Of a stretch of 64,000 nucleotides of DNA, positions 26,322-43,236 are shown piece after piece (the first letter of the stretch is position 1; every line of letters starts with the position of its first letter). A model generated the notes under the pieces. The model ran no database searches and had not been told where the DNA came from. It worked only from the letters and a program-made list of their open reading frames with translations. Both the position numbers and the translations under genes were made by a program. The stretch is taken from positions 165,676 through 229,675 of the IMG/VR virus record IMGVR_UViG_3300013093_000017. One strand, 5' to 3'.

Positions 26322-26330
26322 TAGATTGTT

Positions 26331-26338
26331 TATAAATA
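26331..26338 (+). promoter_or_regulatory. T4-type late promoter TATAAATA (representative of a recurring TAAATA motif)
   Basis: TAAATA core recurs at gene starts. Plus strand: 21582, 23648, 28501, 31631, 35905, 36254, 40315, 41656, 42156, 43283, 43818, 46000. Minus strand: 14549-54, 15025-30, 21572-77, 31655-62. Confidence 0.8.
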
Positions 26339-26346
26339 CATATATA

Positions 26347-27141
26347 ATGTCAAACACTGTTACTTCTTTTGTCTATTGGATACATCTGCAATCGCATCAA
26401 GATATGCTGCTACAAGGATACATTGGAGTTTCAATTAATCCAGAAATTCGATTAAATGATCACAAGAGCGAATCTACCAAATTAAATCCTATTAATCCTG
26501 TGTTAGCTAGTGCTTTTAAAAAATATTCAACTCAGATTATTCAAGATATTGTATTTACGGGGTCAAACACCGAATGTTATGCTTTTGAAGAGCGTATTCG
26601 CCCCACCCCACACATAGGATGGAATATCAATAAGGGCGGAGTATGCCCTCCTTCACAAAAAGGAAAGCATCGGTCGGCATTAACAAAAGAAAAAATAAAA
26701 AATAATAGCTTAAAGCAGGGAACAAATAGAACAATAGAGTATGTTAAAACCCATCAAGATGTTATTTACAAGGTGTTATCTATGATCTTAGAAAGAAATC
26801 GATGTGTTACTATTTTAAGAGAAACTGGAATAACTCGAGATTTATATAACAAAATTAAAAAAAAATATCTAACATATATTGAGTTATTAAACACCCATAC
26901 CGATTATACTTTAATAGCAGACCATATTAAAAAAACAAACGGAATGCAGCAAAAGGTATTTTCTGATAAAAAAGAGCTTTTAATAGAATTATATAGATTA
27001 ATAAATCTCAATATTAAACGAAAAATTATTCTATCTGAATTGGGCATCTCTCCTGCATTTTATGGGAGATTTAGAAACAAAGAGTTAGAATTTATATCGT
27101 ATTACAACTCACAATCTACTACCGGCGGTGATACACAATGA
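26347..27141 (+). CDS. GIY-YIG homing endonuclease with NUMOD3-like motif and tandem HTH-like C-terminus
   Basis: VYWIH...GYIGVS...RLNDH...E...GWNI, then KGKHRSALTKEKI. Start ATG 26347 lies 8 nt after a perfect TATAAATA. Confidence 0.75.
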   Translation: MSNTVTSFVYWIHLQSHQDMLLQGYIGVSINPEIRLNDHKSESTKLNPINPVLASAFKKYSTQIIQDIVFTGSNTECYAFEERIRPTPHIGWNINKGGVCPPSQKGKHRSALTKEKIKNNSLKQGTNRTIEYVKTHQDVIYKVLSMILERNRCVTILRETGITRDLYNKIKKKYLTYIELLNTHTDYTLIADHIKKTNGMQQKVFSDKKELLIELYRLINLNIKRKIILSELGISPAFYGRFRNKELEFISYYNSQSTTGGDTQ

Positions 27142-27383
27142 TAAACAAGTATGTAGAATTACATGAGAAGTTTATGGACCTGCTGGCCAAGTATCATAAT
27201 GCTCATGTAGTGTTTATCAATAAACCAAACTTCTGGAATACTCGAGAGTTCCTTGGTATTATGATAAGCATGAGTAAGGTAGTTAAAGAAATTAGAAAAA
27301 ATAATATCGCCATGCGCAAAGAAATGCAGATAGCGATAAAGGCTAGAAAGAAAGTTATAGCAGAACATAAAAAGGAGAAGTAA
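27138..27383 (+). CDS. Hypothetical basic helical protein
   Basis: ATG overlaps the upstream stop (ATGA); operon-like packing. Confidence 0.65.
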   Translation: MINKYVELHEKFMDLLAKYHNAHVVFINKPNFWNTREFLGIMISMSKVVKEIRKNNIAMRKEMQIAIKARKKVIAEHKKEK

Positions 27384-27385
27384 AC

Positions 27386-27580
27386 ATGAGTTCAACCCAA
27401 GCAATCCAAGACGCAGTAGTAGCATTCGTAGCAGAAGACGCAAAGTTCACAGCAGGTAATTCAGCAGCAGGTACTCGCGCTCGTAAAGAGTTAGCTGAGT
27501 TAGGCAAGTTAGTTAAAGCTCGTCGCAATGAAATTACCGCAGAAAAAAACGCTCGTAAAGAAGCTAAAGCTGCCAAGTAA
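27386..27580 (+). CDS. Histone H1-like (Hc1-family) small DNA-binding protein
   Basis: GNSAAGTRARKEL motif characteristic of Hc1-like proteins; K/A-rich tail; AAGGAG RBS. Confidence 0.75.
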   Translation: MSSTQAIQDAVVAFVAEDAKFTAGNSAAGTRARKELAELGKLVKARRNEITAEKNARKEAKAAK

Positions 27581-27583
27581 TAG

Positions 27584-28030
27584 ATGTCTTGGACGTATCA
27601 AGGCATATTAGTCGAAACGCTACCTGAAGATTGTGTTGGTTATGTATATCTTATAACCTGCATACCTTCGGGGCGCAAGTATATTGGTAAGAAGCTGGCT
27701 AAGTTTGCAAAGACTTCTTACAAAACAGTAACATTAAAAAATGGTACTAAGAAAAAGAAAAAGATCCGCAGCAAGATTGACAGCGACTGGCAAGAATATT
27801 TTGGATCTAGTGTAGAGTTATCTGCTGATGTCTTAACATTAGGGGTTGACCAGTTCACTCGAGAAATATTATACTACTGTAAGTCAAAAGCAGAATGTAG
27901 CTATCTTGAAGCACGCGAACAGTTTGAAAGAAAAGTTTTAGAATCCTCTGATTATTACAATGGTATAATCAGTTGTAAGATACATCAATCACACATTAAA
28001 AATTTAGACACCAAGTCACACTCCTACTAG
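27584..28030 (+). CDS. Minimal GIY-YIG nuclease (catalytic domain only)
   Basis: GYVYLIT...RKYIGKK...YFGSS...FTREIL...YLE...YYN; Lys-rich insert; no C-terminal DNA-binding repeats. Confidence 0.8.
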   Translation: MSWTYQGILVETLPEDCVGYVYLITCIPSGRKYIGKKLAKFAKTSYKTVTLKNGTKKKKKIRSKIDSDWQEYFGSSVELSADVLTLGVDQFTREILYYCKSKAECSYLEAREQFERKVLESSDYYNGIISCKIHQSHIKNLDTKSHSY

Positions 28031-28067
28031 AAAACACCAGCTAACGCAGTAAAATACAGTATAGACT

Positions 28068-28495
28068 AGCACCGGTAAATTTCGGGTGCCTTTAACCTGG
28101 ATCTAAGATCTCAGGGGCGGAAATCTTTGCGCTGTACAGAGTACTCAACCACTACCGAAAGATGAAGATCAGATATGCCTACACTAACTGATTTGGTTGT
28201 TTGAACAGGATAAATTAAAGGCTAAAAGAAGGGAGAAAAACCCTACGTTTGTGTGTATGTTTACGTATATACACAAGCCGCCGTCGTTATAAAGACGCAG
28301 CTCGAGGTACCGGACGACCGCCTCTGTAATGCTGTAACGTGAAGTGATTGCGATACTCAGATAATGCAATTTATGATCTTTGCCCGCCCTGGGCAAAGAG
28401 TGACCACTTAATCTAGATAATATCTTATGTCTTTCTTCGAAAGAAAAATTGCTCTGAGTGTTAACGAAAGAGCAAATGAGCGCAAGCTCATTATA
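28068..28495 (+). ncRNA. Candidate large structured non-coding RNA (unknown class)
   Basis: 500-nt intergenic gap in an otherwise tightly packed genome, containing more than 12 hairpins and nested long-range helices, including a GCAA-capped stem (see findings). Confidence 0.7.
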
Positions 28496-28534
28496 ACACA
28501 TAAATAAATTCATATTACCTATTAGGAATCGGAT

Positions 28535-29287
28535 ATGAGAATCGAAGAATTATTAGCTGAACAACAATTAGATGAGTTAGGTTGGAAGAATGGTACTCCC
28601 ACAAATGATGATGGAACTCCTTTACCTAAGAGTGGTATTGCTCAGGGTGTAAACAAAGTAGCTGGTGGTATAGGTAAAGCTGTAGGAGGAGTTGCAGGTG
28701 CATGGCAAGCTGCTAAACAAGGATATCAAACAGGTAAAGCTGCTGTATCAGGGCAAGGATCAAATACTCCCACGCAACCTAATGCCCCTGCTGGTCAAGG
28801 ATCTAATGTAACTACTGGTAATCAAACCTCACAAGGTGATACCCAAACAGTTGGTACTACTAAAACTGTAGGACAAACACAAACAACTCCCCAACCTAAC
28901 ACTGCAACTGCGCCTAGTGCGCCTGCTGGTCAAGAACCTGCACCACCTGCTAATACAGCACAAGCTGATCAACAGGCTAAAGTTGGAGTAGGTCAAATCA
29001 ATAAGATTATTCCCGGATTACGTACTCGTGATCTACAAAGTCTTAAGAAAACTATTGATCAACGTATGCAAGCAATGAATAAAACTCCTAATCCTACTGG
29101 ACAACAAACTCCTAATCAAGGTAATCAAACAGTGACCGCTGCTAATACTGTAGCAAATGCACCTGCAGGACAACAATCTAATGTGGGTAAATTTTCTGGA
29201 CAACCGGCGAATGTAACACAAGGCAATCCGTTAGCAATGGCAGAAAGCGCAGAATTCTACAGCAAGTTCCTAGGAAAGAATATTTAA
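28535..29287 (+). CDS. Low-complexity putative head-internal protein
   Basis: MRIEELLAE N-terminus; Q/T/P/A-rich; TAAATA at 28501 and AGGA RBS. Confidence 0.6.
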   Translation: MRIEELLAEQQLDELGWKNGTPTNDDGTPLPKSGIAQGVNKVAGGIGKAVGGVAGAWQAAKQGYQTGKAAVSGQGSNTPTQPNAPAGQGSNVTTGNQTSQGDTQTVGTTKTVGQTQTTPQPNTATAPSAPAGQEPAPPANTAQADQQAKVGVGQINKIIPGLRTRDLQSLKKTIDQRMQAMNKTPNPTGQQTPNQGNQTVTAANTVANAPAGQQSNVGKFSGQPANVTQGNPLAMAESAEFYSKFLGKNI

Positions 29288-40325: not shown

Positions 40326-41102
40326 ATGAACAAATACGAAAAATGGTATAATAATATAGTAGCAATGGGCTTAATAGATCGCCCTAATATGCGCACTGCC
40401 CGGCACCACATCATTCCTGAGAGTTTTTTCAAGAATAGAACACGTAAAGGCCCCCCTGGGTGGTTAGATGGTAATCCTGATGATCCATCTAACCTCACAT
40501 TTCTTACAGGAAGGGAACACTTTATATGCCACTGGCTATTGACTAAGATTTATAGCGGAGAAGCTAAAGCCAAGATGATATATGCATTACGGATGATGAG
40601 AGCAGGAGAATACTATACAAAAATAACTGCAAGAGTATATTCTAATATAAAAGAAGAATATTCTAAAATTGCTAGTACCGCTGTTTCTGGAGAAAATAAT
40701 CCTATGTGGGGTAAAACACACACCGAAGAAACAAAAGATAAAATACGGCAAGCAAACCTAGGTAATCAAATAAATGAAGAACAGCGTAAAAAGATAAGTG
40801 ACAGCAAGTTAGGCAGAAAGCGTTCGCCATTTAGTGATGAGTGGATAGCAAATATAAAAGCGGCAAGGCAAGGTGAATTAAATGGTATGTATGGAAAAAA
40901 TCACTCAGAAGAAACTAGAAAGAAACAAAGCGAAAAAGCCAAAGGCAGAAAATATAGTGCAGATGTAGTTGAAAAACGTGCTGCAAAGATTAGAGGTAGT
41001 AAAAGAGAAAAACTTCTCTGCCCGCACTGTAATAAAGATGTAGCAGTAAATGGATATGCAAGATGGCACGGCGACAATTGTAAACTTAAAGGACCTAAAT
41101 AA
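40326..41102 (+). CDS. HNH homing endonuclease with NUMOD3 repeats
   Basis: HHIIP...NLTFLTGREHFICH; NPMWGKTHTEETKDKI and GMYGKNHSEETRKK repeats; C-terminal CPHC...RWHGDNCK. Confidence 0.85.
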   Translation: MNKYEKWYNNIVAMGLIDRPNMRTARHHIIPESFFKNRTRKGPPGWLDGNPDDPSNLTFLTGREHFICHWLLTKIYSGEAKAKMIYALRMMRAGEYYTKITARVYSNIKEEYSKIASTAVSGENNPMWGKTHTEETKDKIRQANLGNQINEEQRKKISDSKLGRKRSPFSDEWIANIKAARQGELNGMYGKNHSEETRKKQSEKAKGRKYSADVVEKRAAKIRGSKREKLLCPHCNKDVAVNGYARWHGDNCKLKGPK

Positions 41103-42148: not shown

Positions 42149-42243
42149 AAGACAATAAATATACTTGTTCACTCTTAAAGAGAGTTTATGCGGAAATCCA
42201 ACCGCGTAGGCGCTAGAACGCTATATTCACAAGGAGAAATAAA

Positions 42244-43236
42244 ATGGGACGTCCTTTAAACGACAGATTTTTTGGTAACCGTAACATCGGTTCCGTAAGT
42301 ACAACAACAGACAACGGCATTGGCGGCGAAGGTATTGCCAGTGTAAGTTGGAGCAATTTAGGTAGCGTGTTAGCTACTAGCGGTAGCGGTACTCCACTAT
42401 CAGGTATACAATTGCCAGCACCAACACTACCAGGTGGCGTACAAGCAACTTGGACATTAGTTTACGGTGTAGACGTTGTATCAACAGGCGCTGGCCGAGC
42501 AGGATTATACACAGGCGATCTTTACACATATCCTGATATTCCTGGCTCAAGTGTTCAAGTTGCATCAACATCAAGTTCAAATGCTACATTTACTGTACTT
42601 GCATCAGGTAGTACAGGCACACTAATCACAGACACACAAGGTGTTAACCTTACTAAAGTATCAGGTGCAGGAGTTGGTACATTCTTAGTTGATGTTAATC
42701 AAAAGATTGTAAGTTCAAACATTGTTGAAAGCGGTTCTGGATACACTGGCGTAGAAACAATCACAGTTACTCTGGCAAACGGCGCAACAGGCCAGGTGCC
42801 AGTAACAAGTGCTATCAACTTAACAACAGACAGCGGAATCCAAAACCCAAGTCAAAACCCAGCAGGCGAAAATGCTAATGCAATCATTATCTACGCTAAC
42901 ACAACTGGCGCAGGTGCTAAGATTGGCGACATACAAAAACAAGTTGGTTCACATCGTTATCGAGTTAAAACAGCAGACGGCGTTGCTCGTGTACAATTAG
43001 TTGCTTCAAATACTCCAGCAATTGGTCAAGCATATATTATTGCAACTGATTCAGGTGGTGCAACCTATTGGGTAACTAAACTAACAGCACGCAGAGCTGT
43101 GTTAACTCCACGTGGTGACGGTACTCCACAATTCCCACTAGTAGACAACGGCGAAGGTGGTACACAACCAGTATCAGCAGGATGGGTATTAAGCGGTGCA
43201 GTAGCTAACCAATCTGTAGTTGTTCAGAACGCTTAA
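42244..43236 (+). CDS. Virion structural protein (possible decoration protein)
   Basis: Own late promoter, strong AAGGAG and own terminator; T/G/S-rich beta-type composition. Confidence 0.55.
   Translation: MGRPLNDRFFGNRNIGSVSTTTDNGIGGEGIASVSWSNLGSVLATSGSGTPLSGIQLPAPTLPGGVQATWTLVYGVDVVSTGAGRAGLYTGDLYTYPDIPGSSVQVASTSSSNATFTVLASGSTGTLITDTQGVNLTKVSGAGVGTFLVDVNQKIVSSNIVESGSGYTGVETITVTLANGATGQVPVTSAINLTTDSGIQNPSQNPAGENANAIIIYANTTGAGAKIGDIQKQVGSHRYRVKTADGVARVQLVASNTPAIGQAYIIATDSGGATYWVTKLTARRAVLTPRGDGTPQFPLVDNGEGGTQPVSAGWVLSGAVANQSVVVQNA

What the first reader, a model, noticed from the sequence alone, without database searches (positions are those of the whole stretch)
27584..28500. ~430-nt multi-domain structured RNA directly downstream of a catalytic-domain-only GIY-YIG nuclease: candidate nuclease-ncRNA system
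Seen: this is the only ~500-nt gap in a densely coding window, and almost all of it can base-pair. Domain 1 is closed by GCCTTTAA(28088-95)/TTAAAGGC(28215-22) and encloses CCTGGATC-TAA-GATCTCAGG (28096-115), CAACCA(28146)/TGGTTG(28194) and ATCAG(28168)/CTGAT(28188). A 5' hairpin GCACC/GGTGC (28069-89) precedes it and AGGG/CCCT (28230-44) follows. Domain 2 is closed by ACGTT(28245)/AACGT(28336) and holds an 11-bp stem (28249-76), CGTC/GACG (28282-97) and a nested CAGC-GAGG-CGG/CCG-CCTC-GCTG arm (28298-334). Domain 3 is closed by AAGTG(28342)/CACTT(28405) and holds a perfect TCTTTGCCC/GGGCAAAGA stem whose GCCCT loop could pair with GGGGC at 28114. The 3' end has TTGCTCT/AGAGCAA and AATGAGC-GCAA-GCTCATT (GNRA loop). 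G-U pairs and the GNRA loop favour a + strand RNA. The upstream 148-aa GIY-YIG lacks the NUMOD/HTH DNA-binding modules carried by the endonucleases at 26347 and 40326, but has a Lys-rich insert (KTVTLKNGTKKKKKIRSK). Inference: the RNA could be a partner, scaffold or guide for this nuclease, or an independent ribozyme-like or replication-related element. I do not recognise it as a known RNA class.
Basis: partly seen in the sequence, partly recalled or inferred. Interest (0 to 1): 0.9.

Follow-up and report, generated by a model that had tools for sequence, protein, structure and literature searches.

The report
Large structured RNA beside phage nuclease
A roughly 440-base, intricately folded non-coding RNA follows a small nuclease-like gene in a freshwater T4-like phage; its first third is a motif catalogued in 2010, the rest is a conserved extension I could not find described, also present in host bacteria, and it is probably not a guide for the nuclease.

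Summary
The RNA is real. Window 28031-28534 is the only large non-coding gap. About 28040-28493 on the + strand is conserved in more than 130 related loci. It folds into 16 helices supported by compensatory changes, three of them pseudoknots.

It is not a fully unknown class. Positions 28064-28202 are a full-length match to Rfam RF01718, Polynucleobacter-1 (104 bits against a cut-off of 37). That family's describers already noted in 2010 that it lies downstream of one particular phage gene family. The remaining ~300 nt match no Rfam family and turned up in no paper found by three literature searches.

The same large RNA also occurs in chromosomes of freshwater Burkholerales (Limnohabitans, Polynucleobacter), with no GIY-YIG gene beside it. 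The conserved core is the 3' part. The Polynucleobacter-1 domain is one of several interchangeable 5' domains.

An odd pair of "twin" segments always carries the same variable 7-mer.

The GIY-YIG link is strong synteny (about 88% adjacency), not an obligate partnership. One phage has a PD-(D/E)XK nuclease in its place, several close homologues lack the RNA, and cultured relatives have the protein without it. No guide-like segment was found.

Function is unknown. My best guess is a trans-acting folded RNA or RNA-protein complex.

The parts
27584..28030 (+). 148-aa GIY-YIG-like protein with catalytic domain only (SegE_GIY-YIG, phrog_447). It is a conserved syntenic gene, not a sporadic homing endonuclease.
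   Evidence: Pfam PF19835 at 2e-30 and no other domain. phrog_447 matches over full length. There are 478 phage records with homologues. The AF2 model has pLDDT 85.9, and the Lys-rich insert forms a long beta-hairpin at residues 40-66.
28040..28493 (+). The whole structured RNA, about 440-455 nt. The 5' end is uncertain but lies at or before 28056. The 3' end is at hairpin P12.
   Evidence: Conservation profile over 62 distinct homologues. A de novo covariation scan returned 16 helices. G-U cells 411 against A-C cells 66.
28056..28135 (+). Pseudoknot PK0: 5' leader 28056-60 pairs with the P3 loop 28131-35. It lies upstream of the Rfam model start.
   Evidence: 96% canonical, 32 doubly compensated cells, 0 of 500 shuffles as good, slid partners at most 0.60.
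28064..28202 (+). Domain 1, a full-length Rfam RF01718 Polynucleobacter-1 match. It contains P1 28069-89, P2 28096-115, P3 28125-41, P4 28146-51/28194-99 and P5 28167-93.
   Evidence: cmscan 104.2 bits against gathering score 37, model positions 1-141. Covariation.
28230..28244 (+). Hairpin P6 (AGGG/CCCT), preceded by the conserved AGGCAAAAGA linker. This linker is conserved in the bacterial copies too.
28247..28278 (+). Hairpin P7, 12 bp. Its sequence is hypervariable but every pair is compensated.
   Evidence: 12 of 12 pairs show changes on both sides.
28260..28343 (+). Pseudoknot PK1: P7 loop 28260-66 pairs with 28337-43.
   Evidence: 99.5% canonical, 7 of 7 pairs doubly changed, 0 of 500 shuffles as good.
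28283..28318 (+). Pseudoknot PK2: GUCGU 28283-87 pairs with ACGAC 28314-18, inside the invariant GGUACCGG..ACCGCC core.
   Evidence: 95% canonical, 65 doubly changed cells, 0 of 500 shuffles as good.
28298..28334 (+). Nested arm P8 (28298-301/28331-34) and P9 (28304-08/28320-24). Some homologues carry an extra hairpin inserted here.
28342..28367 (+). Twin module A: AAGUGA-linker-CUC-AGAUAAU-G.
   Evidence: Identity covariation with module B and no exceptions in class 1.
28378..28398 (+). Hairpin P10 (CUUUGCCC/GGGCAAAG), lying between the twin modules.
28398..28423 (+). Twin module B: GAGUGAC-linker-UCU-AGAUAAU-A. It carries the same 7-mer word as module A.
28430..28445 (+). Small UUCG/UACG-capped hairpin, followed in many homologues by an A-rich insertion of variable length.
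   Evidence: The stem covaries, with 24 and 22 doubly changed sequences at two pairs.
28449..28475 (+). Hairpin P11, with the conserved loop GAGYGnnARCGAA. The same loop is present in the bacterial copies.
   Evidence: An nhmmer profile of P11-P12 hits bacterial loci at 3e-6 to 5e-3.
28474..28493 (+). 3'-terminal hairpin P12 (AAAUGAGC-GCAA-GCUCAUU).
   Evidence: 7 of 8 pairs doubly changed.
28499..28506 (+). CATAAATA, a T4-type late-promoter-like motif for the downstream genes. It marks the end of the RNA element and is not part of the RNA.
   Evidence: ATAAATA occurs 400-500 nt after the RNA start 54 times across 60 phage loci, and almost nowhere else between 900 nt upstream and 700 nt downstream of the RNA start (2 other occurrences, none upstream). 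In the window, 5 of the 6 copies of the motif lie 50 nt or less before an ORF start.

Best explanation
**Shown**
- Window ~28040-28493 (+) encodes a large, heavily pseudoknotted non-coding RNA.
- Its 5' third is the Rfam motif Polynucleobacter-1. The other ~300 nt are a conserved extension that matches no Rfam family and that three literature searches did not turn up.
- It belongs to a modular family shared by freshwater T4-like phages and chromosomal, partly island-borne loci of Burkholderiales.
- The family's common core is the 3' part: the GGUACCGG..ACCGCC pseudoknot, twin modules flanking hairpin P10, hairpin P11 with a fixed loop, and terminal hairpin P12. The 5' domain is exchangeable.

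**Inferred**
- In the phage, the RNA is made as the tail of the rightward gp47/gp46-like - GIY-YIG transcription unit. No promoter is conserved in the 500 nt before it.
- It survives as a discrete folded RNA bounded by P12.
- It acts in trans as a folded RNA or RNA-protein particle.
- The two modules always carry the same lineage-specific 7-mer, with no complementary partner inside the RNA. They most likely offer two equivalent sites to one sequence-specific partner, either a dimeric protein or two copies of one molecule.
- The GIY-YIG gene is a conserved neighbour and probably a co-transcribed gene. It is not a required partner, and the RNA is not its guide.
For: **Rfam and conservation**
- Rfam match.
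- Conservation over the whole 28061-28495 stretch in 62 distinct homologues.

**Structure**
- The de novo covariation scan returned only sensible helices.
- RNAalifold found compensated pairs in 18 of 24, 14 of 20 and 19 of 36 predicted pairs.
- The count of structure pairs gave 97.2% paired against 75.3% in shuffles, and covariation 0.618 against at most 0.088 for slid partners.
- All three pseudoknots beat every one of 500 shuffles.
- G-U cells 411 against A-C cells 66.

**Independence from a downstream gene**
- In L085, L005 and class 2 loci the RNA is followed by a convergent gene.

**Bacterial copies**
- They show the same architecture and lack a GIY-YIG neighbour.

**Modularity**
- Class 3 and class 4 RNAs have different 5' domains.

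**Twin-word identity**
- Exact in 63/63 class 1, 10/10 class 3, 4/4 class 4 and 12/18 bacterial RNAs.
- Shuffled sequences show it in 2 of 4900 cases.
- No internal complementary column was found.

**Promoter**
- No conserved sigma-70-type promoter in the 500 nt upstream.
Against: - There are no transcript data, so the ends and the stability of the RNA are inferred.
- No partner has been identified. PADLOC, NCBIfam and Pfam give nothing useful for the neighbouring genes.
- Twin identity could instead mark two processing or ligation sites, or alternative docking of one receptor.
- The ~88% adjacency to the GIY-YIG gene, at a fixed spacing of about 20-50 nt, could still reflect a lineage-specific functional link.
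- A different small nuclease sits in the same slot in L083, which keeps that possibility open.
Confidence: 0.45

Rival explanations
1. Conflict RNA. The bacterial copies sit on mobile islands or satellites. They are switched on by the late transcription machinery of an infecting T4-like phage. The phage carries its own diverged version as a competitor or decoy for the same kind of partner, or the roles are reversed.
For: - Bacterial copies have a conserved [C/A]TAAATA(A) motif with no -35 element, about 55-60 nt before the conserved RNA body. A covarying 5' hairpin follows it. The motif is the same as the phage's own late-promoter-like CATAAATA.
- An integrase, an IS3 element and truncated copies lie nearby.
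- DUF6641 is always the divergent neighbour.
- The twin words differ between phage and bacterial versions.
Against: - The motif is short and AT-rich, and could be conserved for other reasons.
- No defence or satellite hallmark genes were found.
- In L154 the RNA abuts housekeeping genes.
- DUF6641 is absent from cultured phages and from the phage loci.
Confidence: 0.15
2. Ribozyme or processing substrate. The fold is catalytic, or it presents two identical sites (the twin modules) to one active site. This excises or rejoins the ~56-nt P10 segment.
For: - Many invariant unpaired nucleotides lie inside pseudoknots (GGUACCGG, ACCGCC, GCCGCC).
- The two modules are identical and each is preceded by GUGAC, directly after the end of a helix.
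Against: - There is no match to any ribozyme family in Rfam.
- Nothing indicates cleavage products.
- The 5' domains are exchangeable, which is unusual for a catalytic core.
Confidence: 0.12
3. Nuclease-RNA system. The RNA binds the GIY-YIG protein as a scaffold, regulator or guide.
For: - In every RNA-ascertained locus with upstream DNA except L083, the GIY-YIG gene ends 19-53 nt before the RNA.
- About 88% of protein-ascertained loci keep an RNA downstream.
- The flanks on both sides are variable while this pair stays together.
- The Lys-rich beta-hairpin is 5-9 residues longer than in relatives that have no RNA.
Against: - Bacterial copies have no GIY-YIG neighbour.
- L083 has a PDDEXK_15 nuclease instead.
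- Six close homologues have no RNA downstream.
- Melnitz, ACP17, phiM12 and a Variovorax phage have the protein without the RNA.
- There is no guide-like hypervariable single strand and no target enrichment.
- In class 4 loci another ORF separates the two.
Confidence: 0.1
4. Cis-acting element. The RNA is a long 3' UTR that stabilises or processes the GIY-YIG operon mRNA, or a leader or riboswitch for the downstream late genes.
For: - It lies immediately after the GIY-YIG stop codon, and no promoter of its own was found.
- Weinberg et al. listed the motif as a possible cis-regulator.
Against: - Downstream genes vary, or are convergent.
- A late promoter lies between the RNA and the next gene.
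- Bacterial copies stand alone, divergent from DUF6641.
- The complexity far exceeds what a stabiliser needs.
Confidence: 0.08
5. DNA-level element. It is a replication origin or primer region, or a recombination site, with the twin modules as direct-repeat cores.
For: - It lies next to gp46/gp47-like recombination genes.
- Identical direct repeats are what a recombination core would require.
Against: - RNA-type evidence dominates: G-U tolerance on one strand only, pseudoknots and tetraloops.
- A 56-bp segment between the repeats is too short for ordinary site-specific recombination. This last point rests on general knowledge.
Confidence: 0.04

Closest known systems
Polynucleobacter-1 RNA motif (Rfam RF01718; Weinberg et al. 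2010, PMC2864571)
   Same: - Window 28064-28202 is a full-length member (104 bits).
- It has the same helices P1-P5.
- It has the same habitat, freshwater and Burkholderiales.
- It has the same position, downstream of the phage gene family the describers noted.
   Different: - The Rfam model covers 141 nt and 16 original examples.
- Here the conserved structured unit is about 440 nt in phages and roughly 500-600 nt in bacteria.
- There is an extra 5' pseudoknot strand and about 300 nt of 3' domains.
- The describers did not find the motif in any sequenced purified phage. Here it sits in a 229,675-bp T4-like viral contig and in more than 130 other viral contigs.
- Some relatives keep the 3' domains but replace the Rfam domain.
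Large ornate bacterial and phage RNAs of unknown function (GOLLD, ROOL, OLE, HEARO, raiA)
   Same: - Several hundred nucleotides long.
- Many covarying helices and pseudoknots, with many invariant unpaired bases.
- Occurs in phages or prophages as well as in cells.
- Function unknown.
   Different: - There is no Rfam match to any of them.
- No tRNA genes are nearby.
- Multimer formation, shown for GOLLD, ROOL and OLE by cryo-EM (bioRxiv 10.1101/2024.12.08.627333), is untested here.
Nuclease-associated guide RNAs (IscB/TnpB omega RNA, of which HEARO is one; CRISPR)
   Same: A structured RNA is encoded directly beside a small nuclease gene and is conserved with it.
   Different: - The nuclease here is GIY-YIG, not RuvC or HNH.
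- The RNA and the protein each occur without the other.
- There is no terminal guide segment, no transposon ends and no target matches.
T4 Seg-type free-standing GIY-YIG endonucleases, and catalytic-domain-only GIY-YIG enzymes such as T4 endonuclease II
   Same: - The GIY...YIG motifs and conserved Arg, Glu and Asn positions are present.
- Its small size resembles endonuclease II. That comparison comes from memory and was not tested.
   Different: - It has no DNA-binding module.
- It is a syntenic core-like gene, 55-78% identical across loci, the same range as gp46.
- It is not sporadic like homing endonucleases.
- No solved structure is detectably similar.
Protein-sequestering RNAs with repeated sites (CsrB/RsmZ, 6S RNA)
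   Same: Repeated equivalent sites on one folded RNA would allow bivalent capture of a partner.
   Different: - The words are not GGA motifs in most lineages. Variants include AGAUAAU, GCAUAAU and AGCGAAA.
- There is no open-promoter mimic.
- This comparison is by analogy only.

Membership tests
Rfam RF01718 Polynucleobacter-1 | Covariance-model score at or above the curated gathering score (37 bits), over the full model | tested here: met
   104.2 bits, model positions 1-141 of 141, at 28064-28202 on the + strand. Class-1 homologues score 80-122 bits.
Rfam RF01718 Polynucleobacter-1 | Consensus helices kept by compensatory changes | tested here: met
   P1, P2, P4 and P5 each have 2-4 pairs with changes on both sides and are 93-100% canonical.
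Rfam RF01718 Polynucleobacter-1 | Lies downstream of the gene family noted by the describers (GOS11034, possibly homologous to PSSM2_218 of cyanophage P-SSM2) | tested here: inconclusive
   The RNA lies directly downstream of the conserved GIY-YIG-like gene. That gene has homologues in Prochlorococcus and Synechococcus phages. I could not check directly that it is GOS11034 or PSSM2_218.
RNA-guided nuclease systems (omega RNA/HEARO, CRISPR-like) | Nuclease and RNA co-occur obligatorily | tested here: not met
   The RNA occurs without the GIY-YIG gene in 25 bacterial loci and in L083. The GIY-YIG gene occurs without the RNA in 6 close homologues and in cultured phages.
RNA-guided nuclease systems (omega RNA/HEARO, CRISPR-like) | Hypervariable single-stranded guide with matches to targets | tested here: not met
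   The variable stretches are paired (P7), are loops, or are the twin words. A lineage's own twin word is not enriched in complementary form in 582 kb of flanking phage DNA: 56 hits against a mean of 44 for other lineages' words.
Group I intron carrying a GIY-YIG homing endonuclease | Group I catalytic core, interrupting a host gene | tested here: not met
   No Intron_gpI hit even at E up to 10. The flanking ORFs are complete and unrelated.
Free-standing GIY-YIG homing endonuclease (Seg-like) | GIY-YIG catalytic domain | tested here: met
   PF19835 at 2e-30. Invariant Y22, Y33, G35, R93, E109 and N126.
Free-standing GIY-YIG homing endonuclease (Seg-like) | C-terminal DNA-binding module, and sporadic, mobile distribution | tested here: not met
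   There is no second domain. The position between the gp46-like gene and the RNA is fixed in more than 70 loci, with identity like that of core genes.
Cis-regulatory 5' leader or riboswitch | Always upstream of a co-oriented regulated gene | tested here: not met
   A convergent gene follows the RNA in L085, L005, L011, L023 and L083. A late-promoter-like motif lies between the RNA and the next gene.
GOLLD / ROOL / OLE / HEARO / raiA large RNAs | Match to the family covariance model | tested here: not met
   There are no such hits at the gathering threshold in the window, nor at E up to 10 in 27950-28560.
Rfam RF02947 cow-rumen-2 | Score at or above the gathering score (66 bits) | tested here: not met
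   20.6 bits, E 0.26, at 28247-28350. The hit did not recur in homologues in a larger search. I treat it as chance or, at most, a lead.

The most novel reading that the evidence does not exclude
This is a new family of large modular RNAs that sits at the interface between T4-like phages and mobile islands of their freshwater hosts. The island copies are driven by a T4-type late promoter and so are expressed only on infection. The phage carries its own version. Both use twin, lineage-specific identical words to capture a sequence-specific factor. That would be an RNA-level arms race or satellite-helper dialogue of a kind not described for T4-like phages.
Probability: 0.15. Interest if true: 0.85.

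Novelty: new variant of a known kind. Interest (0 to 1): 0.68.

Why it matters
- Large RNAs with this much tertiary structure are rare. Those that have been studied have usually turned out to be ribozymes, RNA-protein machines or, recently, RNA-only cages.
- A motif filed since 2010 as a 141-nt small RNA is here shown to be only the 5' domain of a 440-600 nt RNA.
- That RNA has three covariation-supported pseudoknots in its phage form.
- It has interchangeable 5' domains.
- It has a 3' core shared by abundant freshwater phages and by their Polynucleobacter and Limnohabitans-type hosts.
- The twin-word identity covariation is an unusual signature and can be tested directly.
- The result also corrects a tempting misreading, a GIY-YIG guide-RNA system.
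- Rfam RF01718 could be extended and split on this basis.

Tried and rejected
**Searches that found nothing**
- blastn of 27300-28700 against cultured phages.
- tRNA and tmRNA scan of the window.
- Sequence search of the GIY-YIG protein against PDB.
- Foldseek of a confident model against PDB: best E 0.31, so the endonuclease II comparison stays untested.
- PADLOC and NCBIfam on DUF6641 and its neighbours.
- tblastn of DUF6641 against phages.
- tblastn of the bacterial neighbour proteins against the window and the phage loci.
- Three literature searches for a fuller description of the RNA. Look-ups inside two candidate papers found no mention.

**Leads that did not hold**
- The class-1 domain-2 covariance model (R1) does not reach class 2 or bacterial copies. 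It does reach class 3 weakly.
- The cow-rumen-2 resemblance is below threshold and did not recur.
- The CsrA-like GGA reading of the twin words is rejected, because most lineages lack GGA.
- A sigma-70 promoter reading of GUGAC..GAUAAU is rejected. The spacing is 10-12 nt, and the bacterial words are not -10-like.
- A small ORF between the modules is rejected, because the frame and length vary.
- A target search for the twin words found no enrichment.
- A conserved promoter inside the GIY-YIG gene is absent.
- The minus-strand 109-aa ORF is not conserved.

Full report
**What is there.**
- The window is part of a T4-like phage contig, IMGVR_UViG_3300013093_000017 (229,675 bp).
- The rightward genes are gp47-like and gp46-like recombination nuclease genes, a homing-endonuclease-like ORF, an 81-aa ORF, a histone-like Hc1 gene, and the 148-aa ORF at 27584-28030. 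After the gap come two low-complexity proteins and then leftward baseplate genes.
- The 148-aa protein matches PF19835, SegE_GIY-YIG (2e-30), and nothing else. It also matches phrog_447 over its full length.
- The stretch 28031-28534 is the only large gap in the window.
- Its only long ORF, 109 aa on the minus strand, stays open in 3 of 62 homologues.

**Known part.**
- cmscan places a full-length Polynucleobacter-1 RNA (RF01718) at 28064-28202 on the + strand. It scores 104.2 bits against a gathering score of 37.
- Nothing in Rfam accounts for 28203-28500. The best hit there is cow-rumen-2 at 20.6 bits, E 0.26, and it did not recur in homologues.
- The motif's describers wrote that most examples lie downstream of a gene family possibly homologous to PSSM2_218 of cyanophage P-SSM2. 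They also wrote that the motif was not found in any sequenced purified phage.
- So both domain 1 and its gene neighbourhood were already on record.

**The RNA is much larger than the Rfam model.**
- A pattern scan of viral contigs gave 120 loci, of which 76 are true homologues.
- In 62 distinct sequences the whole of 28061-28495 is conserved. The flanks are not.
- I ran a covariation scan with no prior structure. It required at least 85% canonical pairs, and at least two pairs with three or more doubly compensated sequences. It returned 15 helices and no obvious false ones. With P3 added, the model has 16 helices.
- The tool-based checks agree:
  - RNAalifold found compensated pairs in 18 of 24, 14 of 20 and 19 of 36 predicted pairs for the three sections.
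  - On a model-based alignment of 57 distinct domain-2 sequences, 97.2% of cells pair, against 75.3 +/- 0.7% in shuffles.
  - In that alignment 19 of 24 pairs change on both sides. The covariation score is 0.618, against at most 0.088 with slid partners.
- Three pseudoknots each beat all 500 shuffles and all slid registers:
  - 28056-60 with the P3 loop at 28131-35;
  - the P7 loop 28260-66 with 28337-43;
  - 28283-87 with 28314-18.
- G-U cells outnumber A-C cells 411 to 66 in the helices, so the + strand is the RNA.

**Relation to the GIY-YIG gene.**
- Among loci found through the RNA, every one with upstream DNA has the homologue (55-78% identical) ending 19-53 nt before the RNA. The one exception is L083.
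- Meanwhile the genes on either side of this pair come and go.
- The link is not obligatory:
  1. L083 has a PDDEXK_15 nuclease in the slot.
  2. Among 76 loci found through the protein, 53 have the class-1 RNA and about 14 have an RNA with a different 5' domain. Six have a 334-383-aa membrane/coiled-coil ORF overlapping or directly following the GIY-YIG stop, and no RNA.
  3. In three class-4 loci an 85-93-aa ORF lies between the two.
  4. Cultured phages with the protein at 38-49% identity (Melnitz, a Variovorax phage, ACP17, phiM12) have no such RNA and no large gap.
  5. The 25 bacterial copies have no GIY-YIG neighbour.
- The protein is widespread, with 478 phage records. It is syntenic, which does not fit a homing endonuclease.
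- Its basic insert models as a long beta-hairpin. A shorter form is present in relatives that have no RNA.
- No guide-like segment or target enrichment was found.

**A modular family shared with bacteria.**
- A genome scan found the motif in isolates and complete chromosomes of freshwater Burkholderiales. These include Limnohabitans sp. Bal53, Polynucleobacter rarus and Burkholderiaceae MiE-M28.
- These copies have the same order of elements over roughly 500-600 nt:
  - domain 1;
  - the AGCACAAAGA linker plus a hairpin;
  - a GGAGAC.GC.AAACCGCCC core;
  - P10 flanked by twin modules;
  - P11 with the same GAGCG..AGCGAA loop;
  - P12.
- Profiles built from the phage 3' domains hit class 2 phage loci and bacterial loci at the right place, and hit no negative controls below E = 1.
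- The bacterial gene lies divergent from a DUF6641 gene.
- In some loci it is near an integrase or an IS element, and some copies are truncated.
- Class 3 and class 4 phage RNAs keep the 3' core but have other 5' domains that Rfam does not recognise.
- The 3' core is therefore the common denominator.

**Unexplained signature.**
- Two ~26-nt modules flank P10. Each has the form: helix end, then GUGAC, then a linker, then CUC or UCU, then a 7-mer.
- The 7-mer varies between lineages. There are seven words in class 1, and others in class 4 and in bacteria. Within any one RNA, the two modules carry the same word.
- Exact identity holds in 63/63 class 1, 10/10 class 3, 4/4 class 4 and 12/18 bacterial RNAs. 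The other six bacterial RNAs differ by one mismatch.
- Shuffled sequences show the pattern in 2 of 4900 cases, and reverse strands in 0 of 98.
- No third column inside the RNA covaries with these positions.
- This points to one external partner that recognises both sites, or to one active site that acts on both.

**Expression.**
- No sigma-70-type promoter is conserved in the 500 nt upstream.
- No late-promoter-like ATAAATA occurs within 900 nt upstream. It does occur just after P12, 54 times across 60 loci.
- I infer co-transcription with the GIY-YIG gene.
- In bacteria a [C/A]TAAATA(A) motif with no -35 element precedes a covarying 5' hairpin of the RNA. It resembles the phage's own late-promoter-like motif. 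This is a lead only.

**Verdict.**
- A real, large, + strand structured RNA. Part of it is already catalogued, and most of it is not described in anything I could search.
- Its function is unknown.
- The best-supported reading is an independent trans-acting folded RNA or RNA-protein particle with bivalent recognition modules.
- The nuclease-guide idea is unlikely, at about 0.1.

Noticed in passing
window 42168-42246 (+); also L085:13683-13759: A second catalogued but uncharacterised motif, Rfam RF02980 freshwater-2 (55.7 bits against gathering score 49.9), ends at the start codon of ORF 42244-43236. The same motif recurs in a related phage locus.
   Followed up: no
window 28342-28367 and 28398-28423; all RNA classes: The twin modules carry the same lineage-specific 7-mer after CUC and UCU. 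This is covariation by identity, not by complementarity, and nothing inside the RNA pairs with them.
   Followed up: partly
L126-L156 (bacterial loci), about 55-60 nt upstream of the RNA body: A conserved [C/A]TAAATA(A) motif without a -35 element. It is the same as the phage's late-promoter-like CATAAATA. A covarying 5' hairpin that the phage RNAs lack follows it.
   Followed up: partly
L083:1666-2184 (-): A 172-aa PDDEXK_15 nuclease occupies the slot that holds the GIY-YIG gene in all other RNA-ascertained loci. One small nuclease has been replaced by an unrelated one.
   Followed up: partly
L167, L172, L198 (class 3); L161, L165, L216, L228 (class 4): Downstream of close GIY-YIG homologues lie large RNAs with unrelated 5' domains and no Rfam match. 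They keep the same twin modules, P11 loop and P12. In L165, L216 and L228 an 85-93-aa Cys/His-rich ORF sits between the gene and the RNA.
   Followed up: partly
L179, L192, L194, L210, L215, L224: A 334-383-aa ORF overlaps or directly follows the GIY-YIG stop codon and takes the place of the RNA. It has a hydrophobic N-terminus and a coiled-coil-like remainder.
   Followed up: no
L129, L130, L152 (bacterial): Truncated RNA copies break off at three different points and continue into unrelated DNA. Limnohabitans sp. Bal53 has one full copy (L141) and one truncated copy (L129).
   Followed up: no
window 26331 and 40313: Late-promoter-like [CT]ATAAATA motifs sit directly before the two homing-endonuclease-like ORFs: 26326-27141 (weak GIY-YIG match) and 40326-41102 (NUMOD3).
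   Followed up: no
window 27386-27580 (+): A 64-aa Hc1-type histone H1-like protein gene (PF07432, 2e-12) lies in a T4-like phage. It is present upstream of the GIY-YIG gene in about half of the related loci.
   Followed up: no
window 28155 and 28163: These two positions swap U/C and C/U (33 against 29 sequences). The swap goes together with a change of the small hairpin between them (CCC-GAAA-GGA against CCUUUACAGG). It may be a non-canonical pair or a base triple.
   Followed up: no
window 5774 and 26165: There are two exact reverse-complement copies of the module B 10-mer (ATTATCTAGA) in the window, where about 0.2 are expected. One lies inside the gp46-like gene. This is probably chance.
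   Followed up: no
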